Of a stretch of 64,000 bases of DNA, positions 5,800 to 58,138 are shown in pieces. The translations under genes and the position numbers were made by a program. Positions within the stretch are counted from its first letter, which is position 1, and every line of letters begins with the position of its first letter. The notes beneath the pieces are model-generated. The model did no database searches, had not been told where the DNA came from, and saw only the letters and a program-made list of their open reading frames with translations. The stretch covers positions 248,001-312,000 of IMG/VR virus record IMGVR_UViG_3300047445_000186. One strand, given 5' to 3'.

Positions 5800-5892
5800 A
5801 CTCCTATTTACGAGGTGTTCGTCCCGGTCCTGATTCGAGGACTCCAGTGCGGTGTATCTTTCTTACGATACACCCTCATCACTGGAGTTCAA

Positions 5893-28774: not shown

Positions 28775-28851
28775 CCCAGTTCAGGGACGCTGCTCCCTCC
28801 ATGAATCGTTACAATTGAACATCCAATCGTAACACTCAATGGAGTCAAATT

Positions 28852-39209: not shown

Positions 39210-39279
39210 GGGCTTTAGAGTCATACTTCTCGCTGCTAAATAGTCCTCAGAGGGCCACGTCGTGGCCGCAGAGGACTCC

Positions 39280-40506: not shown

Positions 40507-42720
40507 ATGGCTGCGCATCGATACTGGCGCATCACTGGTCTTGAGGCCTTTGCAGGTGCAGATCTTGAACTGAGTGAATTTCAGCTCCTGAACGGTGCCA
40601 CTCGCGTTGATGCGTCTGCAACGCTCACATGCTCAAACTCACCAGCAATTGGCGCAGTTGCGAACATCCAAGATAACAATCTGAGCACGTCTGCGTACTG
40701 GCAAAAGGCATCTCTTGTCGGGCTTACGCTGAACTGGGACTTTGGTGGATCGCCGACTCAGGTGAATGATATTCGGATTGCTGGTGGTGACAGCGCACTG
40801 ACGTTCCCGCTGTATGCTCGGCTAGAGTACTCGGACGATAACGTTGCGTGGATCGTGCAGTACACGTACGGTGGTATCACCTGGCCAGGCCCGCGCACGC
40901 TGACTTCATCTGGGACATTCTTGACTAATGGCGGGGTATGCACCTGCTTGTTGCACTTCGACGGTGTGAACGGTGCTACCACAACAACTGACAGCAGCTC
41001 AATCGGGGCGACCGTCACGTTCAACGCGATGGCAATTTCCACGACCTTGTCGATCTATGGTGGCTCTTCACTGTCTCAAACTGGAGCTCGCGGGTACATT
41101 AGTCTACCAGCTAATACTGCGTACGTGCCAGCGGGCGATTTCTGTATCCAGGGCTGGTTCCGAAATGCTGCAGCGGGTGGCGGCAGTACCCTTGTTTTGT
41201 ACGTCAAGGGATCAATTTCGGTCTATTCTTACTTGGTATTTGTGAATGGCAACGGGTATCTGCAGGCCAACATCTTCGGCACCGGCGGCAGCGTTGCGCT
41301 GCTCGCCCCTTCACTATGGGCAACAAATACCTGGTGTCATGTTGCGGTGACTAGACAAGGTAACGTTTTTAGACTGTTCGTGAATGGTTTAATTGTAAGC
41401 ATAATCACGGCGCCGAGTTCATTTGGCGCCTTAGTCGCTAGCGCAGGTCCCCTCAGTCTCGCTAATGACACGGCGGGGACATATGGTTGGGGCGCTGTTC
41501 CTGGCTATATCGACGAATTTCAAATCATTAATGGCGCGGCAATTTACACGCAGGCCTTTACTCCGCCAGCCGCCCCCTCAACTGCTACCGCAATTGACCA
41601 AGTTCAAGGTATTCTTCAGAACCTCGGCGGTGGCCGCGTAGCGAGCGGGAACAATCTCGTTCTCCCAAGCGTGATTGGGAGTTCCCTGGCGTCATATGGC
41701 GCGAGCAGTCAACCGCCGAGCGCGTTCATTCGTGGTCGAAGAGACTACGTGTACAACGCGAATGGATACCAAGGTCTCATTGACGGGATCGTCGATTACA
41801 AGGCGACCCCGTTTAATGTGCCTGTCTCGCGGCGCGTCCGGCTTCACCGACAGGCAGATGGTTTGTTGATCCGCGAAGTGTTCAGTGATCCAATCACTGG
41901 CGAGTACAAGTTTGATTACATTGACGAGACACAGAAATACTTTGTGTGCAGTCTCGATCACACTGGCGCTTTCCGTGCCGTGATCAGCGATAATCTGACA
42001 CCGACAATTATGAGTGGTGCACCGATCGCGTATCCACCTGCGCACTACAGAAGCGTCGGTCCTGTGGCAACGTACCAGGCCGGGCCGGGCACTACAGTTG
42101 TCCCTAGCACTCCTACTGGGATGACTGTTGGTGATCTCATGATTGCCAGCATTGCGAACATGATCTGTACCGTGACGCCTCCAGTAGGATGGACATTGGT
42201 GAATTCGTACAGCATGAATAATGGCGCAAACACCCAACAGGTTATGCTAAGTGTGTACAGCAAGTATGCGACCTCTGCAGACGTTGCTATTGCGGCGCAT
42301 ACTTTCAGTTTCAGCGCCACGAGTACACAGGGCGCAACTGGAGTTATCACCGCGTTCTACAACCCAGCAGGGCTTCCAGTTGTTGTTGACACGTCTGCAG
42401 TGAACGGGTATTTGGTCGGGAATGCATCCACCCCACCACAGCAGTCGCAGACGATGATTTTCACGCCAATGCGAGTAACGAACAATAATTCGCACATCAT
42501 GCTCGTTACCGCTCAAGCGTTCATGGGTACAACGTTCAATGCAGGCACAGGTCTGATTCTCAGAGCAGGAAGTACAGCAGGCGGGATCGGTGTCTGCACA
42601 GGTACCAGCAATCTGCAAAGCGGGTATGAGAACGGCGTTGGGTACAATGGGTACATGATGACATGGAATAACGTCGCGACGCAGCCGGCGATCGGCATTG
42701 GTCTGATTTTGACGACATAA
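40507..42720 (+). CDS. Tail fibre / receptor-binding protein B1 with LamG-like domain
   Basis: MAAHRYWR start; WCHVAVTRQGNVFRLFVNG..GYIDE. Confidence 0.75.
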   Translation: MAAHRYWRITGLEAFAGADLELSEFQLLNGATRVDASATLTCSNSPAIGAVANIQDNNLSTSAYWQKASLVGLTLNWDFGGSPTQVNDIRIAGGDSALTFPLYARLEYSDDNVAWIVQYTYGGITWPGPRTLTSSGTFLTNGGVCTCLLHFDGVNGATTTTDSSSIGATVTFNAMAISTTLSIYGGSSLSQTGARGYISLPANTAYVPAGDFCIQGWFRNAAAGGGSTLVLYVKGSISVYSYLVFVNGNGYLQANIFGTGGSVALLAPSLWATNTWCHVAVTRQGNVFRLFVNGLIVSIITAPSSFGALVASAGPLSLANDTAGTYGWGAVPGYIDEFQIINGAAIYTQAFTPPAAPSTATAIDQVQGILQNLGGGRVASGNNLVLPSVIGSSLASYGASSQPPSAFIRGRRDYVYNANGYQGLIDGIVDYKATPFNVPVSRRVRLHRQADGLLIREVFSDPITGEYKFDYIDETQKYFVCSLDHTGAFRAVISDNLTPTIMSGAPIAYPPAHYRSVGPVATYQAGPGTTVVPSTPTGMTVGDLMIASIANMICTVTPPVGWTLVNSYSMNNGANTQQVMLSVYSKYATSADVAIAAHTFSFSATSTQGATGVITAFYNPAGLPVVVDTSAVNGYLVGNASTPPQQSQTMIFTPMRVTNNNSHIMLVTAQAFMGTTFNAGTGLILRAGSTAGGIGVCTGTSNLQSGYENGVGYNGYMMTWNNVATQPAIGIGLILTT

Positions 42721-42769: not shown

Positions 42770-43975
42770 ATGACATCTCCAGTAGATACATCCGTAAAAT
42801 CATTCGACTACTCAATGTTGGGAGCGGCTGCCCTGAGCGGCACGGTCGGCTCGTTGTTGCCAATTCTTGACCAATGCCTGGTGAATGGGTTTGACACTCG
42901 AGCAGCGTCAAGCATTGTCGTTTTTGGCGGGATCGCGACAGTAAGCTACACCGGCATTACGCACTCTGCGCGTTTGAACTCGGTTATTCTCGTGACTGGT
43001 GTGACTGACCTTACGGCCCTGAACGGAGAACAGAAGGTCACCGCCGTCGGCTTCGGTTTCATTAAGTTCGCAACCAGTGTTGCGAACGGTACCGCGACCG
43101 GTACGATCTCGTTCAAGATGGCTCCACTTGGATGGGCGATTGCGCAGACAGGTACTAATCTTCGCGCGTACAAATCGACCGATGTTACATCGACCGGCTG
43201 CATTCTTCGTGTCGACGACACCGTTGCCACGTCGTGCCGTGTCGTTGGATACGAAAGTATGACCGACATCAATACTGGTCTTGGCGCATTCCCGACTGCT
43301 TCGCAACAGCCTGGCGGCGGGTACTGGGTGAAGAGCATTACGGCCTCGGCGGGTACTGTCCTCTGGTCTATCCATGGGGATGGGAAGGTGTTCTACCTGA
43401 ATGTTCAGCCTGGTAGCGTTTCTGGCGCAGGTTTTCAGATCACTTCTAATCGTATGTTCGGAGACATTATTCCGTTCAAACCGGGTGGTGATCCTTATGC
43501 GTGCGTAATGAACTACTCGATCACGTCAACGATTGGCGCGATGCACGACGCCGGTGTTGGTGGGTCGGCTGTCACTCAGTTCGCTCAACCACGCGACTTC
43601 ACGGGGCTTGGATCAGCGGTGATCTCGTTTATCTACCCGTACAACGGCACGACTCTGAACACAATTTCCGGCATTACCTCGATTGCAGGTCCATTCCCAT
43701 CTCAGGTAGATGGTGGCATTTGGTTGAGCTCAAAGTATCTGAACACCACCACCAGCGTTGGCATGCGTGGTCAGCTTCCAGGCGTATTGCACTGTGGTCA
43801 GAGCGGGGTATGGGCCTCGTTTAAAATGGGTGACACGACGCCCGGCTCTGGCCCCCTCGCCGGGCGTTCGCTGCGCGCTACAACAGCAGGGCACGATACG
43901 ACAGGTAGTAACACCACCTCGTCAACTGCAAACACCGGGATCATGTTCTTCGACGACACTGGGCCTTGGCGATAA
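42770..43975 (+). CDS. Tail-fibre-associated structural protein, paralog A2
   Basis: Colinear with A1; late promoter 42730. Confidence 0.75.
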   Translation: MTSPVDTSVKSFDYSMLGAAALSGTVGSLLPILDQCLVNGFDTRAASSIVVFGGIATVSYTGITHSARLNSVILVTGVTDLTALNGEQKVTAVGFGFIKFATSVANGTATGTISFKMAPLGWAIAQTGTNLRAYKSTDVTSTGCILRVDDTVATSCRVVGYESMTDINTGLGAFPTASQQPGGGYWVKSITASAGTVLWSIHGDGKVFYLNVQPGSVSGAGFQITSNRMFGDIIPFKPGGDPYACVMNYSITSTIGAMHDAGVGGSAVTQFAQPRDFTGLGSAVISFIYPYNGTTLNTISGITSIAGPFPSQVDGGIWLSSKYLNTTTSVGMRGQLPGVLHCGQSGVWASFKMGDTTPGSGPLAGRSLRATTAGHDTTGSNTTSSTANTGIMFFDDTGPWR

Positions 43976-43978
43976 GCA

Positions 43979-46900
43979 ATGGCTACGCACAGATATTGGC
44001 GCGCTAAAAATCTTCAGGCGTACGGCGCAACCGGCCTAGACATCACTGAGTACCAGCTTTTTGTTGGCAGCACACGTGTTGACGGCCCGGCGACGCTCAC
44101 CTCCAACATCGCGCCATCAACTGGTTCATTGTCATATCTGCAGGACGGGCTAGCTACGAACAGCGCAATCTGGCTAGCAGCTGATGTTCCCAAACTCGTG
44201 CTCTCGTGGGACTTTGGTTCGACATCCGGTAACTGGGTTGATGTGAATGACATTCAGCTCGGTGGTGGCGCGCTTCGGCAGAATTTTCTGGCGTTCTCCA
44301 CTCTTCAGTACTCGGATGATGCCAGCACTTGGACAGATGCATTCATTAGCACTACGAACGGCTATGTTGCGGGTGCGTACGCGTGGCCTGGAAGTTTTAC
44401 GGCCACCACGAGTAGACCATTCTCGTACAATAGTCTGACAGTGTTGCTTCACGGTGATGGTACTGACGGTGGGACCACGTTCACGGATAGCTCAACGAAC
44501 GCATTCACGGTCACCCCCACAGCTACAACAACAAGTGCAACGCAGAAAAAGTTTGGTACGACTGCGCTTTCGTTCAATGGCGCGACCTGTAAGCTGTTGA
44601 TCGCGCACAACAATGCGTTGGTTCCGAGTGGAGATTTCTGCATTCAGTGTTACGTATGGGTTGCTTCTGCGACGGCTGCGACTCATCGATTCATCGTGAA
44701 CAAATCGATCTCAAGTGGAGTCTGTCCATACGCATTTGCTGTGATGTCGACAGGTGTGTTGTCTGCTAATTCATACAACGCGGCTGGCACGTCGATGGTG
44801 AACTTCACCGCGACTCAGTTAATCACAGCTCAGACTTGGACACACGTAGCGTTCACACGTCAGGGCTTGATTTACCGTATTTTCATGAATGGTCAAATCG
44901 TTGCGCAGGCAACGGCGCCATCAACTGGCGCGCTGTACAACAACAATACGCACCCGATGTGTATTGGGAACGTGTCAGACAGCATTTACCCTATGTTTGG
45001 AACAGGTGGTACCGGGTACATTGACGAGTTCTCATTTGATGCGAACAACGCTGTGTACACTGCGCCATTCATTCCACCTGCGGCTCCAGGCTCAGGTGGT
45101 GGAATCGTGCTTACGAACAATTTCGCGATCTCATCTCCGACTGAGCCGTCTACGGTAGGAAATGGTGTATCATCGTATGGCGTATCAGCGGTGTCAATTG
45201 CGCCGGAAACGGTCGCAGATGTTATCGCCATGTCAGCGCCAACAGTGTACGGTGTAGCTCCACCTCCAGTTTTCTTTGGTGTCAGCACGACATTGATGCT
45301 CTCATATGGTGCTGGACTGCGAGCGCCTAATAACACGCGTGGTCGAAATGATTTCGTCACTGGTGTTCTCGGCTCTGGCGTCGGACGAATCGACGGTGTT
45401 GTGCAAGTTCCTGGTACGCCAAATCAGCCAGTGAAGCGTCGTGTTCGTCTGTACAGGCAAGAAGACGGATACCTTGTGCGCGAGGCCTGGAGTGATTCAA
45501 GCACTGGGGCGTTCTCATTTGACTACGTTGACGAGAAACAGCTGTACTACATCTGCGCATTTGACCACACGAATGCGTTCGTTGGGCTGATCGCTGACAA
45601 CTTAACGCCATCCCTGCTTGAAACTTCTACTGTTGACGCATACGCAGGTGCTCTGAAGAGACTGATCACGATCACTGGCGCAGGTGGTGCAGGTACAGGA
45701 TACGCTATGTTGTTCAAGATTGGGGAGAGCAGCGGTTCTGCCGGCTCCGATTTCAACCTTGAAGCTGTTACAACGACGTTCCCACTTGATAAGAACATCC
45801 CTGGCGATGTGCAGTTCACTGACGTCAGTGGAAGCCCGCTTCCACAGTGGGTCGAGCAAGTCACCGGGACGGCACCGAATCGTGTTGCATGGTTCTGGGT
45901 TAAAGTTTCGGCCGATCTGAGTACAACGCAGTCGATTTACTGCACGTACCGGAATGGTATGAGCACCGCAAGCAATGGCAATACCGTGTTCCTGTTGTTC
46001 GATGACTTCGATGACGGCACGCTCGATACTGGAAAGTGGTCGAACGTCACTGGATCAGGCAGTTATGTAATCTCCGGTTCTGAATTCGTACTCACCGGTA
46101 CTGGTGTTGGTCGCGCGCTTTATTCGGCCACGACGTTCGGTGATGGAATGGAAGTGGTTGGTAAGGTCGGACCATCGGCTACCTCGCTGAGCTACAACGG
46201 TAAGTTCGGTTTCGAAACGCAGTACATCTTCCAAAATGACTGGGACAGCCAAGGATCATCGGAAGTTGTAGTTGGCCCATCGACTAAGACACAACTTGAC
46301 GCGCGCTATCAGACCACGTATTACAGAATGCGAATCCGGCGTGCGGGTGGCGCAGGTAGCATGTTGGTCAATGACGTGGTGAAGCATACACAAGGTTCTG
46401 GGATTGGGACTTCATCTGTGCCAGTTTGGCTGATGAACGTGTATGACGCCACTGTTGCCGGTAAGGTTGATTGGATCGCAGTCAAGAAGTACATGCTCAC
46501 CGAGCCTACGTACTACTCGGCCGACACCTCCATTCCTGCGGCGACTACCGTGATCAACATGACTTTCGATACCGGGAACGGTTCGACTACGTTCACGGAT
46601 ACTGGTTCACAAGCATCAAGTTGGCAGATCGGTACGGGCGCGGTTCAGTGTTCGACGACAGCGGTTCTTGAAGGCGTTTCATCGCTCTTTGTTCCTGGTG
46701 GTGGCTTCGCCTATCTGTACACTACAGCGTACTCCGCGAACATGCTTCCAGCTACCTCAGACTTCTCGCTGAAATTCAAGGCGCGTTCGTCGTCATGGCT
46801 GCGCTTTGACGCTTCTGGGTGCTATTTGATCTCGATTCAGGGCGCGGTAGGAAATGGAGCAGACACGCAATTCGCGATCGCAACGAATCTGAATACATAT

Positions 46901-47170
46901 CTGGCATTCGCGTATAGTGACGGCACGACGCGTTCAGCAGTGACTGGGACTACTCCTGTCCCGGTGAATGTGACCGTGTCATTCGAGTTCAAGCGAGTAG
47001 GCAGTACACTCTCATTGCTGATGAACGGCGTGCTTCAATGTTCTGCTACTCTGTCTGGCGCGTTGAACGTGCCGTCTGGTCAGCAGTGGCGAATCGGTGC
47101 ACCGGCCGGTGCACAAGGCGGTGCATTTAACGGGATGTATTTCGACTCGCTCTCGCTTACTGTTGGTTAA
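43979..47170 (+). CDS. Tail fibre / receptor-binding protein B2 with LamG-like and DUF2341-like domains
   Basis: MATHRYWR start; WTHVAFTRQG; DVQFTD..LPQWVE..AWFWVKV..IYCTY. Confidence 0.75.
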   Translation: MATHRYWRAKNLQAYGATGLDITEYQLFVGSTRVDGPATLTSNIAPSTGSLSYLQDGLATNSAIWLAADVPKLVLSWDFGSTSGNWVDVNDIQLGGGALRQNFLAFSTLQYSDDASTWTDAFISTTNGYVAGAYAWPGSFTATTSRPFSYNSLTVLLHGDGTDGGTTFTDSSTNAFTVTPTATTTSATQKKFGTTALSFNGATCKLLIAHNNALVPSGDFCIQCYVWVASATAATHRFIVNKSISSGVCPYAFAVMSTGVLSANSYNAAGTSMVNFTATQLITAQTWTHVAFTRQGLIYRIFMNGQIVAQATAPSTGALYNNNTHPMCIGNVSDSIYPMFGTGGTGYIDEFSFDANNAVYTAPFIPPAAPGSGGGIVLTNNFAISSPTEPSTVGNGVSSYGVSAVSIAPETVADVIAMSAPTVYGVAPPPVFFGVSTTLMLSYGAGLRAPNNTRGRNDFVTGVLGSGVGRIDGVVQVPGTPNQPVKRRVRLYRQEDGYLVREAWSDSSTGAFSFDYVDEKQLYYICAFDHTNAFVGLIADNLTPSLLETSTVDAYAGALKRLITITGAGGAGTGYAMLFKIGESSGSAGSDFNLEAVTTTFPLDKNIPGDVQFTDVSGSPLPQWVEQVTGTAPNRVAWFWVKVSADLSTTQSIYCTYRNGMSTASNGNTVFLLFDDFDDGTLDTGKWSNVTGSGSYVISGSEFVLTGTGVGRALYSATTFGDGMEVVGKVGPSATSLSYNGKFGFETQYIFQNDWDSQGSSEVVVGPSTKTQLDARYQTTYYRMRIRRAGGAGSMLVNDVVKHTQGSGIGTSSVPVWLMNVYDATVAGKVDWIAVKKYMLTEPTYYSADTSIPAATTVINMTFDTGNGSTTFTDTGSQASSWQIGTGAVQCSTTAVLEGVSSLFVPGGGFAYLYTTAYSANMLPATSDFSLKFKARSSSWLRFDASGCYLISIQGAVGNGADTQFAIATNLNTYLAFAYSDGTTRSAVTGTTPVPVNVTVSFEFKRVGSTLSLLMNGVLQCSATLSGALNVPSGQQWRIGAPAGAQGGAFNGMYFDSLSLTVG

Positions 47171-47223
47171 CCCGAGCCCATTGCTGGGACGCTCTGCAGT
47201 TGTACACTCGTTACAATTGACAG

Positions 47224-49806: not shown

Positions 49807-49853
49807 CAACCTGCCCCCGTAAATAGTCAGTTCATACACATAGGAGAATCCTC

Positions 49854-50108
49854 ATGGATCAAGCCCGTTCAATCACGATTGACGGCATCAGCTACGATGC
49901 CGGTCAGTTCAGCCCCGCAGTTCAACAAGCCGTTCAGATCTACAACGTGTTCAGCGCCGATCTTCAAAAGGCACAACTCGACGTGATCAAGAACCAAGCC
50001 GCTATTCAGTCTGTTGGCGCTCAGATCGGCGAAGCCGTGAAGAAGGAACTTGCTGATAAGCAAGCCGAAGCGAACGCACTTCCTGAAGCAGCGAACGACC
50101 AGGTCTAA
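49854..50108 (+). CDS. Small late coiled-coil protein
   Basis: TAAATA 49820, AGGAG SD, terminator after. Confidence 0.75.
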   Translation: MDQARSITIDGISYDAGQFSPAVQQAVQIYNVFSADLQKAQLDVIKNQAAIQSVGAQIGEAVKKELADKQAEANALPEAANDQV

Positions 50109-50126: not shown

Positions 50127-50160
50127 CCGAAGCCGTCCTCGTGGCGGCTTCGGTTGTTTC
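50127..50160 (+). terminator. Intrinsic terminator
   Basis: CCGAAGCCGTC/GGCGGCTTCGG stem. Confidence 0.7.
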
Positions 50161-50205
50161 CGGATCAGGATGACCTAAATAGAGACTTCTAGTCAGAGAA
50201 TTCAA

Positions 50206-52530
50206 ATGCGAATTATTAGCGAAGGTGCTGGGATTACCCACATCGAAGACCTCCCTGTTGGCGAGTTCATCCGAGTCCTGCGGAACATGCCACTCATGAC
50301 TGCGCAGGAAAAGCTCGATGGTGCTCAGCTCTGGGTCGGTGTCGACGAGGCCGGGAAGCTCTTCGCTTCCCGTGAAGGTAAGCGTTCCGGTTCGGACCGT
50401 AAGTACTCACCGGACGACTGGAACCTGGTCTCCGCGAACAATCAATTCCGCGCTGCTCATGCTGCTCTCGTAGCAGTGCAAGACAAGATCCTTTCGGTAC
50501 TGCAGCCTGGCGACACGGTTGAGGCCGAGGTGTTGTTCGGGCGCCAACCTAATAGTGTCACTTACGGTGCTGGTGGAAAGTCCTACATCGCGTTCCTGCG
50601 TGGTGTCCTCGAGACCGAAGACTCGGTCGCTGAACGGCTCGGTGCCGCGCTGAAGGGGCAGGAAGCCGAAGCGAAGGTTCAAGTGGTTGACACCGAAGAC
50701 GGCGAGACCCTGAACGACGTCGAAGAATCGTACCCGTTCATGTTCACGACACCCCAGCGCGTCGATCCAGAGAAGCTGAAGCAAGCGGCTCAAGTTGAGA
50801 AGCTCCTGAAGAAGCTCGAAGCTTTCCTGCAAGAGCCAAGTGGTACCGAAGGTCTGTCGAACAACGAACTGCTGAACACCAATCTGCAAAAGATTCCGAC
50901 TGATAAGCGACCAGCAGTGAAGGAAGCACGGAAGGCTCTGATGGAACTCGTGATGAACGAGTACAAGATGCCAATCAAGAACGCGCTCCTTGACAATGTG
51001 GTTCGCAAGATCCGCTCTGGCCTGAGTGATGAGGACAAAGGCACCGGGGCCGACATTGGCATCGAAGGAATTGTGCTGCGTGATCAGCAAACCGGTGAAC
51101 AGATCAAGATTGTCGACAAGGACATCTTCACGGCGATCAACACGTTCAATCAGTCCATTCGTCAGACTGTTCAATCATCTCTGACTACCGTCGATCCAGA
51201 CTCTCCGCTCGAGCAGCGTGGTGGTCTCGTTGGTGAGCTCCGTATTCGGATCGCTGAGCTGTTCGGTAATCGCGAAATGGCGAAAGCTTCGAACACCCGC
51301 AAGGTTCTTGAGCCACTGAAGGGCAAGTCGCCTGAAGAAGCAATTGAGAACATGGCGAAGTCGATGGGCGCAATTGAGGACCACGAAGCGATCAAGAAGA
51401 AGATTCTCGCAATGGTCTCTGATACGGCCAGCCAGTTGAAGTCGAAGCTTGAAGAGTTCAAGGCGAATCAGAAGAACTACAAGCTTCAGCTTACGAACGG
51501 CAAGGAAATCAGCCTGAGCGACGACACGATCAAGCGTACTCTGTTGACGTTCGCTGAAGCCCGCAAGAACCTGTTGATTATGTTCGAGCACCTGAAGGCA
51601 ACAACGACTCTGGCGCAGATCCTCGCGGTCCTGTATGGCGGTCAGGCAAAGGCTGTTCACGCACCGAAGATCGACGAAGGCTTGCTCCTTGAGAAGAAGG
51701 TGAAGCGGAAGACGACACAGGCTCAGGACGTTGATCGTCATGAGTACGACAAGCGTGATGTGTTCCAGCTCGTGAACTCGTACCTCGCTACGGTGTTCAT
51801 GACGATGTTGGTCTGGCACGAAGATGACAAGCCAGGTATGCGGATCCTTCGTGACCGTAAGAACATGGGTCTGAAGAATTGGTCGAGCGACATGAGCCCG
51901 TTCAATCACTGGGGCTATGTCATCTGGCGAAATAACAAGCCTGACTTGAAGAAGCAACTGTCGAAGAAGGTTCAGCACGAGCTGTTCGCTACTACCCGTC
52001 AGATCCAAGCTCCACGCTGGCGCTTCCTGCACATTGACTTCTCGACGAATCGGGATGTGAAGGTTGACTGGGCCGATCACCGGAAGACTCTGCAACGCCT
52101 GATTGATCTTACCCGGCTGCGTTCAGATCGACTAAATACGCTACTCGACAAACTGATCCGTTTCCCTGATCTGTCGCATGATGAGAAGCTCTCGGCCGTG
52201 AAGAAGCTGCATACGTTCGCGATGCAATTTGTTCCACGCTCGGTTATGCTCTCTCGGCTGAAGATCATTGAACGGGCACTCACGAACGGAAAAGACGACC
52301 AAATGGTGACTGAAAGTAAACTGCTGAAGTCAATCAGTGCTCTCGCTGAAGACGAAGGTGGCGAAGGCGTGTACACACAGCCTGTCAGCGTTGCCGGAAC
52401 CACATCTGCCGCAATTGCGCCAGTTCAATCACGCGTAGCCCGGGAAGCAACGATCATCAAGCGTAAACGGAATCCTTCCGTGAAGCGTCTGACGATGAAG
52501 TTCCCTGATCCACGCAAGGAAAACGAATGA
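50206..52530 (+). CDS. Large late protein with N-terminal ligase-like covalent nucleotidyltransferase domain
   Basis: EKLDG (motif I), EAEV, IEGIVLR (IV), IKIVDK (V); TAAATA 50176. Confidence 0.7.
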   Translation: MRIISEGAGITHIEDLPVGEFIRVLRNMPLMTAQEKLDGAQLWVGVDEAGKLFASREGKRSGSDRKYSPDDWNLVSANNQFRAAHAALVAVQDKILSVLQPGDTVEAEVLFGRQPNSVTYGAGGKSYIAFLRGVLETEDSVAERLGAALKGQEAEAKVQVVDTEDGETLNDVEESYPFMFTTPQRVDPEKLKQAAQVEKLLKKLEAFLQEPSGTEGLSNNELLNTNLQKIPTDKRPAVKEARKALMELVMNEYKMPIKNALLDNVVRKIRSGLSDEDKGTGADIGIEGIVLRDQQTGEQIKIVDKDIFTAINTFNQSIRQTVQSSLTTVDPDSPLEQRGGLVGELRIRIAELFGNREMAKASNTRKVLEPLKGKSPEEAIENMAKSMGAIEDHEAIKKKILAMVSDTASQLKSKLEEFKANQKNYKLQLTNGKEISLSDDTIKRTLLTFAEARKNLLIMFEHLKATTTLAQILAVLYGGQAKAVHAPKIDEGLLLEKKVKRKTTQAQDVDRHEYDKRDVFQLVNSYLATVFMTMLVWHEDDKPGMRILRDRKNMGLKNWSSDMSPFNHWGYVIWRNNKPDLKKQLSKKVQHELFATTRQIQAPRWRFLHIDFSTNRDVKVDWADHRKTLQRLIDLTRLRSDRLNTLLDKLIRFPDLSHDEKLSAVKKLHTFAMQFVPRSVMLSRLKIIERALTNGKDDQMVTESKLLKSISALAEDEGGEGVYTQPVSVAGTTSAAIAPVQSRVAREATIIKRKRNPSVKRLTMKFPDPRKENE

Positions 52531-54794
52531 ACCTCCTCAAAGAATTCTCCAAGGGCGACGTCCAGCAGAATCTGAAAACCAGCGATCAGTCCGATGCTGG
52601 TACGACTGACACTGCAGCGAAAGCTGTTGACGTGAAGTTCTCGCTTATGCGGAACGCGATCAACACCGACAATAATGAAATCACCGGTTCCGACGTGAAC
52701 GATTACCTTGAGCGTGCTCAGGATCTGAACGACGAAGTTGAATCCGTTGGTTTCGCGATCGAGACCGATGACGGTTCCTTGATCAAAATCTACGTGAACG
52801 CTGAACAAGCCGACGCGTTCAGCGAAGAGCTCGCAAAGGTGCTCGGCCTTGACGATGACGCTGAAGTAGCGATCAACAATCTTGCTCAGAAGTACGACAT
52901 TGTTGACGTGGTATGGCCAGACTCTGGTGATGTAAATGCACTCGGCTCGGGTGATGAAGATGAATTCCAATTGGACGGACCAGGAGAGCCTGGAGACAAT
53001 GACGGAGACGTTTCTATTGACGACGATCTGTCTGACTTTATGGGTGGTGATGATCACGCTGCTGAACCAACCGCAACTGACGCTGCGTCTGATGAGACTG
53101 CTGATGCCCTTCCAGCCGATGACGAATCTGCTGACGGTGATGTACCTCCGGAATCGGGTGAAGACGATGGTGATCTGTCCAAGGATGATTCCGATGGCGA
53201 TAAGGCTGATGGCGATAAGCCTAAGAAGAAGCCTAAGAAGTCTCTGATGAAAGACGTCGCTGGTGGCGACGATGCTGAAGACGACAAGGGCGAAGAAGAA
53301 GGTGGCAAGCCTGAAGGCGCTGATGGTGAAGAAGGCGGCCCAGAAACAATCGATGACGGTGAAGATGAAGGCGACGCTGATGTCGATCCAGATGCTGAGC
53401 CAGACGCCGGCGAAGAATCCGATGAGCTTGACGATGAAGGCAAGCCAAAGAAGAAGTCGAAGAAGAAAGACAAAGAAGTAACGGAAGAAGGTATGAAACT
53501 TAGCAAACTCGAATCGATGGCGAAGGCCCTCACAGAAGACCAGCTCGACGAAGCTGGTGGCACTGATCTGAAACTCGACACGCAGTGGACTGGCCTTCGT
53601 AGCCGTCTGAAGCGCCCGTACGAGAAGAAGATTGTTGAGCTGTTCTCAATGCTCGGCGTTCCAGGTCGTTATGTTGTCGCTGAAGAAGGTGTTGAAGACC
53701 TGATTCGCGGTGCAGCAGACGTTATCCGTCGCCCAGGTCGTAAGCAAACGACGTTCAATGAGTTCTATTCGCAAGTGAAGGCAAGCACAGCTACCACGAA
53801 CGAAAAGAAGCGTGGTGGTCGTCTGCAAAAGGTTCTCGAAACCGTGATGATTGAACTCGGCTTCCCAGCATCGCTGGTCAGCACTGAGTCTGGTCCAGGC
53901 GCTCTTGGTACCGTTCTTGGCCGTGCAGCGAACAAGATCGAAGCAAGCCAATCGCTTGAATCCGCTCTGATCGCATTCGCTAAGGCAATGGGTATCACGT
54001 CCGCTCAAGTGAACGAAGCAAAGACGATCAAGGTCAAGGAACCAGGTTGGTACGTTGTTGACCACATGGACAAGGCAGTTGCTGGTCCAATGCAAGAACG
54101 TGGTGCACACGAACTCTGCGATGAGATGAATGCTGGCAAGACTGGTGGCGACATCAAGGCTTTTGACGTTACGTACTTCACGGATTACGAAATCCGCCGC
54201 ATGAACGAAGCTGTTGTTACCGAAGCAGTTGACGTTGGGAACGACGAGTTCTTCCAGAAGGTTGTTCAACTTGCGGTGTCCCTCGGTATTCCAGAACGCA
54301 ATCTGCAGTACGGTCGCCCAGCACTGGTGAAGTCCCTGCGCGACAAGAAGATGTCCCTCTCGAACCGTGGCATGATCGAAGCACGTGTTGATCAACTGCT
54401 CGCTATCATCGAGAAGGCAACTCGCCAAGCTCCAGCGACTGCACAAGCTACGAATGAAGGCATGCTTGCTGAAGCATTCGACGCGCTTGAAGCTATCCCA
54501 CAAGAGATGTACCAACGTTTCAATGTGCAAGAACCTTCGACCGGTCCAGTGATGATGGCTGGTTACGTTGGTGACACTGACGCGCATTCTGAGACTGTTC
54601 TGGTTCTTGGCGTTGACCCAGAAGCAGAAGGTCGGAACACTCTCCGCGTTGGCGTTGACAACCCATGGAGCGGCTCTGTTCAATCGAAGTATTTCCCAGA
54701 CACGCGCGAAGGTTACCGTGACGCACTGCGTTACGCGAAGATGCTCCGCACGCTGAACCTGAAGACTGGCGGTCGTCCAGCTGAAGTGAAGTAA
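52527..54794 (+). CDS. Large acidic protein, probable head core/scaffold-type protein
   Basis: Asp/Glu/Gly low-complexity block; many h-x-E sites (LTE, VNE, MNE, VTE, LAE). Confidence 0.6.
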   Translation: MNLLKEFSKGDVQQNLKTSDQSDAGTTDTAAKAVDVKFSLMRNAINTDNNEITGSDVNDYLERAQDLNDEVESVGFAIETDDGSLIKIYVNAEQADAFSEELAKVLGLDDDAEVAINNLAQKYDIVDVVWPDSGDVNALGSGDEDEFQLDGPGEPGDNDGDVSIDDDLSDFMGGDDHAAEPTATDAASDETADALPADDESADGDVPPESGEDDGDLSKDDSDGDKADGDKPKKKPKKSLMKDVAGGDDAEDDKGEEEGGKPEGADGEEGGPETIDDGEDEGDADVDPDAEPDAGEESDELDDEGKPKKKSKKKDKEVTEEGMKLSKLESMAKALTEDQLDEAGGTDLKLDTQWTGLRSRLKRPYEKKIVELFSMLGVPGRYVVAEEGVEDLIRGAADVIRRPGRKQTTFNEFYSQVKASTATTNEKKRGGRLQKVLETVMIELGFPASLVSTESGPGALGTVLGRAANKIEASQSLESALIAFAKAMGITSAQVNEAKTIKVKEPGWYVVDHMDKAVAGPMQERGAHELCDEMNAGKTGGDIKAFDVTYFTDYEIRRMNEAVVTEAVDVGNDEFFQKVVQLAVSLGIPERNLQYGRPALVKSLRDKKMSLSNRGMIEARVDQLLAIIEKATRQAPATAQATNEGMLAEAFDALEAIPQEMYQRFNVQEPSTGPVMMAGYVGDTDAHSETVLVLGVDPEAEGRNTLRVGVDNPWSGSVQSKYFPDTREGYRDALRYAKMLRTLNLKTGGRPAEVK

Positions 54795-54809
54795 ACGTGA
54801 ACCTAGTTT

Positions 54810-54831
54810 GAAAGGGCCTTCGGGCCCTTTC
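54810..54831 (+). terminator. Intrinsic terminator with UUCG loop
   Basis: GAAAGGGCC-TTCG-GGCCCTTTC. Confidence 0.85.
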
Positions 54832-54852
54832 TTCGTTACAATTGAAACTTCT

Positions 54853-55527
54853 ATGAAATTCAACTACCAAGACTATCAGACGACGAGTGAGCTCGGCCTT
54901 CGGTGGTATCACACACCAGATGGCGCGTTCCCCTCGATCACGACAGTCCTTGGTGTGTCTGAACCTCCAGAGAAGAAGGCTTCCCTTGTTGCGTGGCAAC
55001 AATCTCTCGGTGCTGTAAAGGCTGCTGAAAAATCGAAGGAAGCGACTGATCACGGCACGATGGTTCACCTTTTGGCCGAGCGATTTCTGAAGGGTGAAGA
55101 GGTCTTTGCTCCTGTTGACGGGAAGCCAGTCTCTGATGTTAGCAAAGCCGGGTTCAACGGCTTGAAGCTGAAGCTTCGTCAGATCAACGAGGTCTGGGGT
55201 CAGGAAGAATCGATCTACTCGCCGACCCTCGAGGTTGCTGGTCGCTTTGACTGCATCGGCCTGTACAAGAACAAGCCATCCGTGATTGACTTCAAGACCG
55301 CTGGCCGTCTGAAGTCGCGGAAGGACATTGAAGATTACGAACTGCAGCTCGCGTTCTACGCTGCTGCGCACAATGAATTGTTCGGCACCGAGATCACTCA
55401 AGGTGTCGTGCTGATGAGCTCTGCCGGTGGAATGCCACAGGAGTTCGTTGTTGATGTCGACTCGAAGCTCGAAGAGCTGGTCGGCCGAATCCAGATCTTC
55501 TGGGAAAAGACTCTCTCCAAAGTATGA
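54853..55527 (+). CDS. PD-(D/E)XK exonuclease (Cas4/RecB-like phage nuclease)
   Basis: PSITTVL, GTMVH, AGRFDC, VIDFKT, QLAFYA. Confidence 0.85.
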   Translation: MKFNYQDYQTTSELGLRWYHTPDGAFPSITTVLGVSEPPEKKASLVAWQQSLGAVKAAEKSKEATDHGTMVHLLAERFLKGEEVFAPVDGKPVSDVSKAGFNGLKLKLRQINEVWGQEESIYSPTLEVAGRFDCIGLYKNKPSVIDFKTAGRLKSRKDIEDYELQLAFYAAAHNELFGTEITQGVVLMSSAGGMPQEFVVDVDSKLEELVGRIQIFWEKTLSKV

Positions 55528-56935: not shown

Positions 56936-58138
56936 ATGACATCTCCAGTCGATACCTCAGTTAAGTATTTCAGCTCGAATATGCCGAACGCTCCAGTGCT
57001 GAGCGGCACTGCCGGCGCGCTGATTGCATTGCTGGACGCTTGTCTCAAGGACGGCTTCAACTCGATTACACCGACATCGATTGTGGTCGCTGGAGGTATC
57101 GCTACTTTGAGCTGGGCCTCTGGTACGTTCGCGGCACTGCCAGACTCGGTAGTGCTGATTGCTGGCGTGACCGACAAGACCGGCCTGAACGGTGAGCAGA
57201 AAGTGCTCACCAAGAGCGCGCTGTCAATCACGTTCGCAACTGCTGAGACTGCTGGCACTGCAACGCTCTCCGCTGCCACGGTGAAGATCGCGCCGCTTGG
57301 ATGGCTGAAGCCTCAATCAGGTACCAACCTTGCAGCGTACCAATCAAGTGATTCACTGTCTACCAAGATGCTACTGCGTGTTGATGACACCGGAACCACG
57401 ATGGCCCGCGTTGTCGGATACGAGTCCATGACCGATGTGAACACTGGAGTGAACCCATTCCCTTCAGCGGCTCAGATGTCAGGTGGCGGTTATTGGTCGA
57501 AGAGCGTGAATGCGAGCGCCGCTACCGTGAATTGGTCCTTGCATGGCGATGGAAGAATCTTCTATCTTAACGTTCAGCCAGGATCGTCGAACGCTTTGGT
57601 GAATCAAATTTGTTCAGGCAAGGTCTTTGGAGACGTGATTCCGACCAAGCCGGGCGGAGACCCTTATGCCTGCTGCCTGAACTACGCCCAGACCGCAACG
57701 ATTGGTAACCAGACCGATGGCGCGTTCGGCGCGTCTGGCGACTTCAAGTTCGCCATGCCTCGCGATTTCACAGGATTGGGGTCTTCAGTGATGTACGGCG
57801 CGTGGACTTTGACTGGAAATGGCGGAGTTTCAGGTCTAGCGAACGCCCTTGGCTCGTTCCCTTCCCCAATTGACGGCGGCCTTTGGCTGTGCAAGAAGTT
57901 CCTGTACACTTCTATTCTCAGTTCCCCTCGTGCCATTTTCCCAGGCCTCCTGAACGTCGTCCAGTCTGGCGTTTGGAATTCCTTCAAGCAAGGAGACTCA
58001 GTGCCGGGGTCTGGGATTTACGCGGGTAAGAACCTGATGGCGGCAACGACATCTGACAACTCGACGGCGTTCACCACAGCTTCTACTGCAGCTAACACTG
58101 GCATCATCTTTTTCGACGTCACAGGCCCTTGGAGATAA
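56936..58138 (+). CDS. Tail-fibre-associated structural protein, paralog A3
   Basis: MTSPVDTSVK..FDVTGPWR, colinear with A1/A2. Confidence 0.75.
   Translation: MTSPVDTSVKYFSSNMPNAPVLSGTAGALIALLDACLKDGFNSITPTSIVVAGGIATLSWASGTFAALPDSVVLIAGVTDKTGLNGEQKVLTKSALSITFATAETAGTATLSAATVKIAPLGWLKPQSGTNLAAYQSSDSLSTKMLLRVDDTGTTMARVVGYESMTDVNTGVNPFPSAAQMSGGGYWSKSVNASAATVNWSLHGDGRIFYLNVQPGSSNALVNQICSGKVFGDVIPTKPGGDPYACCLNYAQTATIGNQTDGAFGASGDFKFAMPRDFTGLGSSVMYGAWTLTGNGGVSGLANALGSFPSPIDGGLWLCKKFLYTSILSSPRAIFPGLLNVVQSGVWNSFKQGDSVPGSGIYAGKNLMAATTSDNSTAFTTASTAANTGIIFFDVTGPWR

What the first reader, a model, noticed from the sequence alone, without database searches (positions are those of the whole stretch)
50206..54794. 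Late ligase-fold protein coupled to an acidic multi-cleavage-site partner
774-aa protein with KxDG, EG.V and K motifs but no OB or adenylation-partner domain I can recognise, plus about 450 aa unknown; expressed late with an IISE leader and ATGA-coupled to a 755-aa acidic protein. Rnl1 already exists, so this may be a virion-borne nucleotidyltransferase (RNA capping/ligation, genome end protection or protein AMPylation).
Basis: partly seen in the sequence, partly recalled or inferred. Interest (0 to 1): 0.6.

Follow-up and report, generated by a model that had tools for sequence, protein, structure and literature searches.

The report
Late-expressed phage RNA-ligase-like enzyme pair
A jumbo phage encodes a very divergent RNA-ligase-type enzyme and an acidic, bead-on-a-string partner in their own late transcription unit, and both carry conserved head-protease cutting motifs in their flexible segments, so they are probably packed into the capsid and delivered to the host, which is not yet shown.

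Summary
ORFs 50206-52530 (774 aa) and 52527-54794 (755 aa, pI 4.3) overlap by ATGA in a 332-kb jumbo-phage record. They form a conserved pair in about 190 metagenomic relatives.

- **Enzyme.** Residues 7-311 of the first protein fold as an ATP-dependent RNA-ligase-type nucleotidyltransferase. The best structural matches are TbREL1, NgrRnl and T4 Rnl2 (Z 8-9). 27 of 44 relatives hit Pfam RNA_ligase. K36, D38, G39, R56, E106, E108, G288 and K301 are invariant.
- **Other domains.** There is no OB fold. Helical domains without a recognisable match follow the ligase domain.
- **Transcription.** The pair has terminator hairpins on both sides and its own TAAATAG element. In this genome that element also precedes baseplate, neck and tail-fibre genes. 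The flanking primase and nuclease genes use a different motif.
- **Processing sites.** The genome encodes a T4 gp21-type prohead protease, which cuts after L/I-x-E. The only conserved aliphatic-x-E sites in the ligase lie in its three disordered segments.
- **Virion data.** A homologue with the same leader, tail and partner was reported in RsoM2USA virions. Shorter homologues in PA5oct and Atu_ph07 were not detected in virions.

Best reading: a capsid-packaged, protease-processed, ejected RNA-ligase-like enzyme. Packaging is about even odds and the substrate is unknown.

The parts
49820..49826 (+). TAAATAG promoter-like element in front of the small conserved ORF
   Evidence: The motif lies 34 nt upstream of the ATG at 49854.
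49854..50108 (+). Small conserved ORF (84 aa, P0151) of unknown function that always precedes the ligase gene
   Evidence: One search gives the translation. It is 61% identical to the 92-aa ORF at the same place in L011. ORFs of 86-95 aa occupy that place in L009, L010 and L031. It has no family hit.
50127..50153 (+). Intrinsic-terminator-like hairpin that separates the small ORF from the ligase unit
   Evidence: The stem has 11 bp (8 GC) and is followed by TTGTTT. Folding gives dG -24.9 kcal/mol, z -2.9. Equivalent hairpins occur in L009, L011 and L031.
50176..50182 (+). TAAATAG late-promoter-like element of the P0001-P0002 unit
   Evidence: The motif lies 30 nt upstream of the ATG. Genome-wide, 21 of 28 copies precede an ORF start by 20-45 nt, against 13% of random positions (P 2e-13). 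The genes that follow include baseplate hub, neck adaptor and tail fibres. The element is conserved in front of the homologues in L009 and L031, and as TAAATAC in L011.
50206..50223 (+). N-terminal leader MRIISE (aa 1-6), predicted propeptide ending in I-x-E
   Evidence: The leader is disordered in the model. Among relatives it varies from 0 to 24 aa but ends in [LI]-x-E before [GS]-I-x-H-[IL]-E-D-L. Leaderless relatives start M-[GS]-I at exactly that point.
50224..51138 (+). RNA-ligase-type nucleotidyltransferase domain (aa 7-311) with motifs I (K36), Ia (R56), III (E106/E108), IV (E287-G288) and V (K301)
   Evidence: Structural matches are 1xdn Z 8.9, 5cot Z 8.4 and 2hvq Z 8.0. ESM Atlas RNA_ligase clusters give TM 0.62-0.67. 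The Pfam PF09414 hit has E 0.011 for this protein, and 27 of 44 relatives hit at E<=0.01. The catalytic residues are invariant.
51139..51669 (+). Helical bundle (aa 312-488) attached to the ligase domain and shared with the shorter RsoM2USA and PA5oct homologues
   Evidence: The model is confident here. Alignments to Trl1-LIG extend to aa 435-447. The RsoM2USA match covers aa 9-456.
51670..51720 (+). Disordered linker (aa 489-505) with two conserved aliphatic-x-E sites (IDE491, LLE496)
   Evidence: pLDDT is below 50. The two sites are conserved in 41 of 44 and 36 of 44 relatives.
51721..52290 (+). C-terminal helical domain (aa 506-695) of unknown function. The predicted fragment 497-715 is basic (pI 10). 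Invariant residues are M563, S564, N567, W569, G570, H609 and W622.
   Evidence: There is no convincing fold match. No stand-alone relatives were found by word search.
52291..52530 (+). Disordered C-terminal tail (aa 696-774) with the conserved L-A-E715 site, a low-complexity stretch and the basic motif KRKRNP...KFPDPRK, followed by the stop codon
   Evidence: pLDDT is below 50 for aa 695-755. The LAE site is conserved in 41 of 44 relatives. The same tail follows L-L-E in RsoM2USA_438.
52527..54794 (+). Acidic modular partner P0002 (755 aa, pI 4.3), translationally coupled to the ligase by the ATGA overlap
   Evidence: An overlapping partner gene follows the ligase homologue in L009, L010, L011 and L031. 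Homology was shown for L011 and for RsoM2USA_437, N-terminal domain only.
52692..52916 (+). P0002 N-terminal alpha/beta domain (aa 56-130), the part shared with RsoM2USA_437
   Evidence: The model is confident here. tblastn gives 44% identity over aa 52-131. The region is 57% identical in L011.
52923..53564 (+). P0002 disordered acidic region (aa 133-346), whose length varies among relatives
53574..54761 (+). P0002 string of small folded modules (aa 350-420, 430-497, 505-555, 574-631, 650-745) joined by disordered linkers that carry aliphatic-x-E or N-E motifs
   Evidence: Modules are inserted or deleted among relatives at these linkers. There is no fold match above Z 5.4.
54810..54831 (+). 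Terminator-like hairpin directly after the P0002 stop codon, which closes the unit
   Evidence: The sequence is shown. The stem has 9 bp, dG -17.1 kcal/mol, and a U-rich tail.

Best explanation
P0001 is a very divergent but catalytically intact ATP-dependent RNA-ligase-type nucleotidyltransferase. It is made late in infection together with its coupled acidic partner P0002, from a transcription unit of its own.

I infer the following sequence of events:
1. Both proteins are built into the prohead core.
2. The phage's T4 gp21-type prohead protease cuts them at the conserved aliphatic-x-E sites in their disordered segments.
3. P0001 yields a ligase module of about 54 kDa (aa 7-491/496), a basic helical module of about 26 kDa (aa 497-715) and a basic tail of about 6 kDa.
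4. P0002 yields a set of small modules.
5. The products stay in the capsid and enter the cell with the DNA.
6. The ligase can then seal broken RNA, such as tRNAs cut by host anticodon nucleases, or other nucleic-acid ends, before any phage gene is expressed.

What is shown and what is inferred:
- **Shown:** the fold, the conservation of the catalytic residues, the gene pair, the promoter class and terminators, the presence of the protease gene, and the placement of the motifs.
- **Inferred:** packaging, cleavage, ejection and the substrate.
For: - **Fold.** Residues 8-311 match RNA ligases best: TbREL1 Z 8.9 over 191 aa, NgrRnl Z 8.4, T4 Rnl2 Z 8.0, Trl1 Z 7.5 and T4 Rnl1 Z 7.2. ESM Atlas RNA_ligase clusters give TM 0.62-0.67 normalised by the match, at rmsd 3.2-3.9. 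27 of 44 relatives hit PF09414.
- **Catalytic residues.** They are invariant across 34-64% identity.
- **Late unit.** A terminator at 50127-50153, TAAATAG at 50176 and a terminator at 54810-54831 bracket the pair.
- **Promoter class.** TAAATAG sits 20-45 nt before ORF starts (P 2e-13). It precedes baseplate hub, neck and tail-fibre genes. Primase and the PD-(D/E)XK nuclease carry CGTTACAATTGA instead.
- **Conserved architecture.** Three relatives of 38-43% identity keep the terminator plus TAAATA arrangement.
- **Protease.** The genome encodes a Peptidase_S77 (T4 gp21) protease, E 2e-27. T4 gp21 cuts after L/I-x-E. The packaged T4 enzyme Alt loses a 7-residue N-propeptide and a C-terminal piece (PMC9026906).
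- **Site placement in P0001.** Only four aliphatic-x-E sites are conserved, and all lie in the 11% of the chain that is disordered. The five such motifs in folded parts are 0-23% conserved.
- **Leader.** Its length varies but it always ends at the same point. Leaderless relatives begin there.
- **Site placement in P0002.** 12 of 14 conserved sites lie in or at linkers.
- **Virion report.** RsoM2USA ORF438 has the leader ...ILTE|G, the L-L-E plus basic tail, and an acidic partner. It was reported among ten major virion bands by LC-MS/MS (PMC8504454).
Against: - **Negative proteomes.** PA5oct gp228 and Atu_ph07 gp66 were not detected in deep virion proteomes, although their neighbours were. Both are short forms without the basic tail or the partner, so they do not test this form directly.
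- **Weak positive.** The RsoM2USA entry lists 51.69 kDa. The other masses in that paper are calculated values (MCP 44.02 calculated against 44.04 listed). ORF438 calculates to 62.43 kDa and ORF429 to 51.58 kDa. The assignment therefore carries an unexplained discrepancy.
- **No direct data.** There are no cleavage or virion data for this clade.
- **Optional leader.** 8 of 44 relatives have no leader, so it cannot be the sole packaging signal.
- **Gene context.** The gene sits next to primase and DnaB in four distant lineages, which could point to replication.
- **Motif V.** The second lysine is not at i+2; the sequence is K301-I-V-D-K305 and K305 is not invariant.
- **Complex prediction.** The P0001-P0002 job gave no verdict.
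Confidence: 0.42

Rival explanations
1. The pair is late-expressed but stays in the cytoplasm, as T4 RNA ligase 1 (gp63) does. It would act on RNA late in infection, or assist morphogenesis (gp63 also promotes tail-fibre attachment), and would not be part of the particle. The aliphatic-x-E motifs would be linear motifs with another role.
For: - Atu_ph07 gp66 and PA5oct gp228 are absent from virion proteomes, while flanking gene products (gp53-65 and gp67-69; gp226-227 and gp230-235) are present.
- The gene lies among tail-fibre-like genes in this window and in L011.
- The T4 gp63 precedent rests on my own knowledge.
- The leader is dispensable in 8 of 44 relatives.
Against: - It does not explain why the only conserved aliphatic-x-E sites sit in the three disordered segments.
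- It does not explain why the leader always ends at one residue.
- It does not explain the RsoM2USA virion report.
- It does not explain the partner's modular, linker-delimited build.
Confidence: 0.3
2. The pair is a replication or recombination accessory. A nucleic-acid end-joining enzyme would work with the neighbouring primase, DnaB helicase and PD-(D/E)XK nuclease, for example in primer or flap processing or in end repair.
For: The order primase, DnaB, small ORF(s), ligase-like gene is kept in this window, in L009, L010 and L031, in PA5oct and in Atu_ph07. A PD-(D/E)XK gene often follows.
Against: - The pair has its own TAAATAG element and is insulated by terminators on both sides. The primase and nuclease genes carry a different promoter-like motif.
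- In L011 tail-fibre genes separate DnaB from the pair.
- The genome already has an ATP-dependent DNA ligase (PF01068).
- The fold is closest to RNA ligases and lacks an OB or DNA-binding clamp.
Confidence: 0.13
3. The ligase-like fold is a catalytically dead relic, and the protein serves only as a structural or scaffolding component.
For: The second lysine of motif V is displaced. The Pfam score is below threshold.
Against: The motif I lysine and seven further active-site residues are invariant in 44 relatives down to 34% identity, and the homologues in PA5oct and RsoM2USA keep them.
Confidence: 0.05

Closest known systems
Rnl2/REL1-type and Rnl5-type ATP-dependent RNA ligases (T4 Rnl2, T. 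brucei REL1, Naegleria NgrRnl; Pfam PF09414)
   Same: - The adenylyltransferase fold is shared (Z 8-8.9 over 185-191 residues).
- The motif order I, Ia, III, IIIa, IV, V is the same, with K36 and R56 spaced 20 apart. By my recollection T4 Rnl2 has the same spacing.
- 27 of 44 relatives give weak PF09414 hits.
   Different: - The score for this protein is below the Pfam cut-off (16.3 against 27 bits).
- There is no Rnl2 C-terminal domain and no Rnl5 N-terminal OB.
- About 150 residues are inserted between motifs IIIa and IV.
- Motif V reads K-I-V-D-K.
- About 460 further residues of helical domains follow.
- The gene is late-expressed with a coupled partner.
T4 Rnl1 (gp63) and fungal Trl1 ligase domain
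   Same: - An adenylyltransferase domain is followed by an all-helical domain. Alignments to Trl1-LIG run to residues 435-447, and T4 Rnl1 gives Z 7.2.
- gp63 is a phage RNA ligase also linked to late functions (my own knowledge).
   Different: - There is no PF09511 signal. The phage's real Rnl1 is a different gene, at window 5641-7008.
- A profile comparison with that gene finds nothing.
- gp63 is not proteolytically processed or packaged.
T4 Alt and the internal proteins IPI-III (capsid-packaged, gp21-processed, ejected proteins)
   Same: - A short N-terminal propeptide ends in L/I-x-E; it has 7 residues in Alt and 6 here.
- There is a C-terminal processed piece.
- A gp21-type protease is encoded in the genome.
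- Expression is late and the cargo is an enzyme (PMC9026906).
   Different: - There is no sequence or fold relation to Alt.
- The activity would be ligase-type nucleotidyl transfer, not ADP-ribosylation.
- Processing and packaging are predicted here, not observed.
- An internal cut would separate two domains.
Phage proteins of Pfam DUF6267 (PF19782) and cyanophage CTP_transf_like fusion proteins
   Same: These are among the nearest predicted viral structures. The ESM Atlas DUF6267 cluster gives TM 0.54 normalised by the match over residues 4-445. BFVD gives E 1e-4 to 1e-5 for cyanophage proteins.
   Different: The PF19782 model finds nothing in this genome, and those proteins are themselves uncharacterised. 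No cytidylyltransferase domain is present here.
Homologues in isolated jumbo phages: RsoM2USA ORF438/437, PA5oct gp228, Atu_ph07 gp66
   Same: - Identity to the ligase is 34% (aa 9-456) for RsoM2USA ORF438, 27-28% (aa 4-359) for PA5oct gp228 and 27% (aa 28-242) for Atu_ph07 gp66.
- All are annotated as hypothetical.
- All lie downstream of the replicative helicase.
   Different: - All lack the C-terminal helical domain (aa 506-695).
- Only RsoM2USA has the leader, the basic tail and an acidic partner.
- Only RsoM2USA's protein was reported in virions.

Membership tests
Covalent nucleotidyltransferase superfamily (ATP/NAD ligases, capping enzymes) | Motif I KxDG with the nucleophilic lysine | tested here: met
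   K36-L-D-G is present. K36, D38 and G39 are invariant in 44 of 44 relatives. PA5oct, RsoM2USA and Atu_ph07 homologues also have it.
Covalent nucleotidyltransferase superfamily (ATP/NAD ligases, capping enzymes) | Motifs III, IIIa, IV and V in order | tested here: inconclusive
   - E106/E108 (III), Y-I-A-F-L 127-131 (IIIa), E287-G288 (IV) and K301 (V) are present and conserved.
- The usual second lysine of motif V (K-x-K) is replaced by K-I-V-D-K, and K305 is not invariant.
Covalent nucleotidyltransferase superfamily (ATP/NAD ligases, capping enzymes) | Nucleotidyltransferase fold | tested here: met
   - The AF2 model has pLDDT 84.
- The six best domain-level matches are all RNA ligases, Z 7.5-8.9.
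- ESM Atlas RNA_ligase clusters give TM 0.62-0.67 normalised by the match.
- Foldseek against PDB is weak (E 0.06), but its top hits are ligases.
Covalent nucleotidyltransferase superfamily (ATP/NAD ligases, capping enzymes) | Formation of a covalent enzyme-NMP intermediate | not testable with these tools
   This needs labelling with alpha-32P NTPs and a K36A control.
Pfam RNA_ligase PF09414 (Rnl2/Rnl5 type) | HMM score above the gathering threshold | tested here: not met
   P0001 scores 16.3 bits against a cut-off of 27. The genome scan with PF09414 finds two other genes, not this one. 27 of 44 relatives reach E<=0.01, best 5.9e-5. The protein is therefore a distant relative, not a scored member.
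Pfam RNA_ligase PF09414 (Rnl2/Rnl5 type) | Accessory domain typical of the clade (Rnl2 C-terminal domain or Rnl5 N-terminal OB) | tested here: not met
   No such domain appears in the Pfam scan or in the model. The ligase domain starts at residue 7 and is followed by helices only.
Rnl1 / Trl1 ligases (PF09511) | HMM or profile similarity to Rnl1 | tested here: not met
   PF09511 hits only the gene at window 5641-7008. hhalign of A1 against that protein gives probability 0.1.
Rnl1 / Trl1 ligases (PF09511) | All-helical C-terminal domain packed on the adenylyltransferase domain | tested here: inconclusive
   A helical bundle follows at aa 312-488. Alignments to Trl1-LIG reach residues 435-447 at Z 7.1-7.5 and rmsd 5.2-5.7, which is within the range helical bundles reach by chance.
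Substrates of T4 gp21-type prohead protease (packaged internal or ejection proteins) | Genome encodes a gp21-type protease | tested here: met
   PF03420 Peptidase_S77 matches at genome 5943-6353, E 2e-27 and 93.5 bits against a cut-off of 27. It lies next to the scaffold and major capsid genes.
Substrates of T4 gp21-type prohead protease (packaged internal or ejection proteins) | Conserved, accessible L/I-x-E sites that delimit propeptides or domains | tested here: met
   All four conserved sites in P0001 lie in disordered segments, and 12 of 14 in P0002 lie in or at linkers. The leader ends at a fixed residue.
Substrates of T4 gp21-type prohead protease (packaged internal or ejection proteins) | Presence in purified virions | tested here: inconclusive
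   This rests on the literature only. RsoM2USA ORF438 was reported in a virion band, with a mass discrepancy. Atu_ph07 gp66 and PA5oct gp228 were not detected. No isolate of this clade has a proteome.
Substrates of T4 gp21-type prohead protease (packaged internal or ejection proteins) | Observed cleavage after Glu at these sites | not testable with these tools
   This needs mass spectrometry of virions, or co-expression with the protease.
Pfam DUF6267 (PF19782) | HMM match | tested here: not met
   There is no match in the genome at E<=10 and none in the Pfam scan. Only structural resemblance is seen.

The most novel reading that the evidence does not exclude
This would be the first capsid-delivered RNA-ligase-type enzyme. 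A jumbo-phage clade would package a pre-made ligase, together with a protease-processed 'polyprotein' of small modules, and inject them with the DNA. Broken host or phage RNA, such as tRNAs cut by anticodon nucleases or other RNA-targeting defences, could then be resealed before any phage gene is transcribed. The basic tail and the acidic partner would act as the packaging device. The short homologues that lack both are the ones not detected in virions.
Probability: 0.3. Interest if true: 0.75.

Novelty: new variant of a known kind. Interest (0 to 1): 0.58.

Why it matters
Phages are known to inject a few enzymes, such as T4 Alt, the N4 and phiKZ RNA polymerases and P1 Dar proteins. An injected RNA-ligase-type enzyme has not been described in the papers I could search. 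If confirmed, it would add RNA repair, or another nucleotidyl-transfer reaction, to the set of functions that act at the moment of infection. That is when RNA-targeting host defences would otherwise win. It would also give a function to a gene pair that is annotated only as hypothetical in isolated jumbo phages and in about 190 metagenomic relatives. The pair also offers a clean test of packaging signals, because natural variants exist with and without the leader, the tail and the partner. Even without packaging, this is a deeply divergent ligase clade with two uncharacterised helical domains. It would be the sixth ligase-superfamily gene in one genome.

Tried and rejected
**Searches that found nothing useful**
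- Megablast of the region against phage genomes found nothing.
- PHROGs and NCBIfam gave no family for either protein.
- Sequence and profile searches of PDB chains gave nothing. The one exception was a spurious APS-kinase hit (E 0.39), rejected because the protein has no P-loop.
- hhalign of the family profile against the phage's own Rnl2-like and Rnl1 proteins gave no similarity.
- The DUF6267 HMM gave no hit, and the name appears in no paper searched.

**C-terminal domain of P0001**
- The Atlas structure search gave only TM 0.3-0.4. The top cluster was HEPN_Swt1, but I see no R-x4-6-H motif in the sequence, so I do not call it HEPN.
- The word search with residues 497-715 found only one fragment.

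**P0002**
- No fold match exceeded Z 5.4.
- PA5oct gp229 is not a homologue.

**Complex prediction**
- The job for P0001 with P0002 residues 1-135 returned no verdict, score 0.00. It counts neither for nor against binding.

**RsoM2USA mass discrepancy**
- I tried to explain the 51.69 kDa listed for ORF438. It fits neither the full ORF (62.43 kDa), nor any Met-start variant, nor ORF429 (51.58 kDa). The predicted processed form, residues 22-509, is 54.44 kDa. This remains unresolved.

**Not run or not available**
- The PA5oct supplementary tables are not held, so temporal expression of gp228 could not be read.
- The big representative search, the sequencing-run search and read laying were not run. 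The claims do not rest on absence of relatives, and the record is a metagenomic virus.

**Procedural note**
I repeated the computation from the stored locus by reference.

Full report
**Where the finding lies.** The window is bases 248001-312000 of a 331,776-bp virus record, a jumbo phage that CheckV rates 94% complete. Its nearest isolated relatives, by protein similarity only, are Ralstonia phage RsoM2USA, Pseudomonas phage PA5oct and its kin, and Agrobacterium phage Atu_ph07.

**The observation.**
- ORF 50206-52530 (774 aa, P0001) and ORF 52527-54794 (755 aa, P0002) are as described, and they overlap by ATGA.
- P0001 begins MRIISE and has K36-L-D-G, E287-G-I-V and K301.
- P0002 has a calculated pI of 4.33.
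- Both are real genes. The word-index search found 194 relatives of P0001, nearly all 750-800 aa and on phage-sized metagenomic contigs. It found 28 relatives of P0002.
The genome also has a PF01068 DNA ligase, a second weak PF01068 match and two PF09414 RNA ligases. P0001 would therefore be a sixth ligase-superfamily gene.

**What P0001 is.**
- Pfam gives only a sub-threshold RNA_ligase hit (E 0.011, 16.3 bits against 27). PHROGs, NCBIfam and PDB sequence searches give nothing.
- An AF2 model built on 44 relatives is confident (mean pLDDT 84). Three segments are disordered: 1-8, 489-505 and 695-755.
- An exhaustive structural comparison puts RNA ligases on top for residues 8-311: TbREL1 Z 8.9 over 191 aa at rmsd 3.5, NgrRnl Z 8.4, T4 Rnl2 Z 8.0, Trl1 Z 7.5-7.6 and T4 Rnl1 Z 7.2. 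DNA ligases score lower, at Z 6.2-6.5.
- Foldseek against PDB is weak (E 0.06), but it also lists ligases first.
- Against predicted structures, RNA_ligase clusters align with TM 0.62-0.67 normalised by the match. In BFVD the best matches are PA5oct gp228 (E 1e-22) and the Atu_ph07 protein named 'RNA ligase' (E 2e-7).
- Scanning all 44 relatives, 27 hit PF09414 at E<=0.01.
- K36, D38, G39, R56, E106, E108, G288, K301 and D304 are invariant, and E287 is present in 42 of 44. That argues for an active enzyme.
- There are three departures from the known clades. About 150 residues are inserted between motifs IIIa and IV. Motif V reads K-I-V-D-K instead of K-x-K. There is no OB or Rnl2-type C-domain.
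- After the ligase domain come a helical bundle (312-488) and, beyond a disordered linker, a second helical domain (506-695). The second domain has its own invariant residues (M563, S564, N567, W569, G570, H609, W622). I found no convincing fold or sequence relative for it.
- The RsoM2USA and PA5oct homologues lack this second domain.

**What P0002 is.**
- The model shows a small alpha/beta domain (56-130), a long disordered acidic stretch (133-346) and five small folded modules joined by disordered linkers.
- Relatives differ by whole modules inserted or lost at the linkers, and by the length of the acidic stretch.
- No module has a fold match above Z 5.4.
- Only the N-terminal domain is shared with RsoM2USA_437, the gene that follows the ligase homologue there.
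- An overlapping partner gene follows the ligase homologue in every relative I looked at. Its homology to P0002 was confirmed for L011. A small 84-95-aa ORF always precedes the pair.

**Transcription unit.**
- A strong hairpin with a U-tract (50127-50153, dG -24.9) follows the small ORF.
- TAAATAG lies at 50176, 30 nt before the ATG.
- A second hairpin (54810-54831, dG -17.1) follows the P0002 stop codon directly.
- TAAATAG occurs 28 times in the genome, about as often as base composition predicts. However, 21 copies have an ORF start 20-45 nt downstream on the same strand, against 13% of random positions (P 2e-13).
- The annotatable genes behind the motif are baseplate hub, a neck adaptor, a long tail fibre and the tail-fibre-like paralogues in this window.
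- The motif resembles the T4 late promoter TATAAATA (my own knowledge).
- The flanking primase gene and the PD-(D/E)XK nuclease gene are preceded by a different motif, CGTTACAATTGA. All seven exact copies of it are followed by an ORF start within 60 nt. The nuclease more likely starts at ATG 54853 than at the listed TTG 54808.
- Relatives at 38-43% identity keep the hairpin plus TAAATA arrangement in front of the ligase gene.
- The pair is therefore an insulated unit of the structural-gene promoter class, set between replication genes. That it is 'late' in time is an inference from this association.

**Evidence for packaging and processing.**
- The genome encodes a T4 gp21-type prohead protease (PF03420, E 2e-27) next to a scaffold-like gene and the gp23-type capsid gene.
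- T4 gp21 cuts after L/I-x-E. The packaged T4 enzyme Alt loses a 7-residue N-terminal propeptide and also a C-terminal piece (PMC9026906).
- In P0001, exactly four aliphatic-x-E sites are conserved in at least 60% of relatives: residues 4-6, 489-491, 494-496 and 713-715. All four lie in the three disordered segments, which make up 11% of the chain.
- The five L/I-x-E motifs inside folded parts are conserved in 0-23% of relatives.
- The N-terminal leader varies from 0 to 24 residues but always ends [LI]-x-E before [GS]-I-x-H-[IL]-E-D-L. Eight relatives have no leader and start M-[GS]-I at that very position.
- For one leaderless relative I checked the DNA. An in-frame stop lies nine codons upstream and no start codon lies between.
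- Cutting at these sites would give a ligase module of 53-54 kDa (pI 5.6), a basic module of 26 kDa (pI 10) and a basic tail of 6.4 kDa.
- In P0002, 12 of 14 conserved sites lie in or at the linkers, including L-K-E at residues 4-6.

**Virion proteomes in the literature.**
- RsoM2USA ORF438 is the homologue; the numbering was checked against the record and the paper's supplement. It has a 21-residue leader ending I-L-T-E|G, an L-L-E site followed by the same kind of basic tail, and the acidic partner.
- The RsoM2USA paper lists ORF438 among ten major bands of purified virions identified by LC-MS/MS (PMC8504454).
- There is a caveat. That paper's masses are calculated ones (MCP 44.04 listed against 44.02 by my calculation). 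The 51.69 kDa given for ORF438 fits neither the ORF (62.43) nor my predicted processed form (54.44) nor ORF429 (51.58).
- Against packaging, Atu_ph07 gp66 is missing from a 131-protein virion list that contains gp53-65 and gp67-69. PA5oct gp228 is not flagged as an MS-detected structural protein, although gp226-227 and gp230-235 are.
- Both of those are short forms. gp66 starts at motif I. Neither has the basic tail nor a P0002-like partner. The three data points therefore fit the idea that the tail and partner go with packaging, but three points are few.

**Weighing.**
- Ligase-type enzyme with a live active site: about 0.9.
- A separate unit of the structural-gene promoter class: about 0.75.
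- Packaged and processed: about 0.5.
- RNA repair on entry as the function: about 0.25, and conjecture. It rests on the RNA-ligase fold and on what an injected ligase could usefully do.
- The main rival is a late cytoplasmic enzyme, with T4 gp63 as the precedent. A replication role is suggested by the conserved position next to primase and DnaB in four distant lineages. The insulated late-type unit weakens that reading, and in L011 tail-fibre genes separate DnaB from the pair.
- The complex prediction for the two proteins returned no verdict and is not used.

**Novelty.** The enzyme belongs to a known superfamily, but it is a new, deep clade with a new architecture and a probable new deployment. 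I rate it a new variant of a known kind. I found no paper that describes this family or a virion RNA ligase.

Noticed in passing
window 47211-47220, 54836-54845, 28809-28818; genome 12823, 53353, 68378, 210682: A second promoter-like motif, CGTTACAATTGA, has a -10-like TACAAT core. All seven exact copies are followed by an ORF start within 60 nt, and two of them precede the primase and PD-(D/E)XK nuclease genes. It looks like an early or middle promoter class distinct from TAAATAG.
   Followed up: partly
window 39262-40503, 42770-43975, 56936-58138 (with 40507-42720 and 43979-47170): There are three paralogous genes of about 400 aa (phrog_9998, 'tail assembly'). Two of them each precede a large Laminin_G_3 baseplate-wedge-like protein. 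The TAAATAG elements at 39237 and 42730 are each followed by a near-identical hairpin-forming leader (TCCTCAGAG...).
   Followed up: no
window 54808-55527: The PD-(D/E)XK (Cas4-like) nuclease ORF is listed from TTG 54808. That start lies inside the terminator hairpin of the preceding unit. ATG 54853, 17 nt after the CGTTACAATTGA motif, is the more likely start.
   Followed up: partly
genome C1:79847-80479, 64256-64489, 86728-87288, 158717-159178; window 5641-7008: The genome carries five other ligase-superfamily genes: one clear and one weak PF01068 DNA ligase, two PF09414 RNA ligases and one Rnl1. That is an unusually large set for one phage.
   Followed up: partly
P0002 aa 352-420, 432-497, 574-631 (window about 53580-54419): Three helical modules of P0002 share a recurring L-G-[VFI]-P motif (LGVPGRY, LGFPASL, LGIPERN). 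They look like internal repeats of one small domain. Relatives also repeat a short I-G-S-K-F-L-x-R-V motif at module starts.
   Followed up: no
PMC8504454, section 'Structure Proteins'; locus L001 7938-9620: The RsoM2USA paper gives 51.69 kDa for ORF438. Its other masses are calculated values, and ORF438 calculates to 62.43 kDa. The neighbouring ORF429 calculates to 51.58 kDa. This is either a band estimate, a processed form or a labelling slip.
   Followed up: yes
BFVD and ESM Atlas matches: T4-like cyanophage proteins annotated 'cytidyltransferase-like' (for example in S-PM2) and DUF6267 proteins have a predicted fold like residues 4-445 of P0001. This hints at a wider, uncharacterised viral ligase-like family that is sometimes fused to a second nucleotidyltransferase.
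   Followed up: no
genome C1:8603-9856 (L025 1351-2604): The gp23-type major capsid protein has two L-L-E sites in its first 40 residues (ALLE|G and HLLE|T). The RsoM2USA capsid protein has L-L-E sites and an I-A-E site at matching places. This fits a T4-like propeptide cut.
   Followed up: partly
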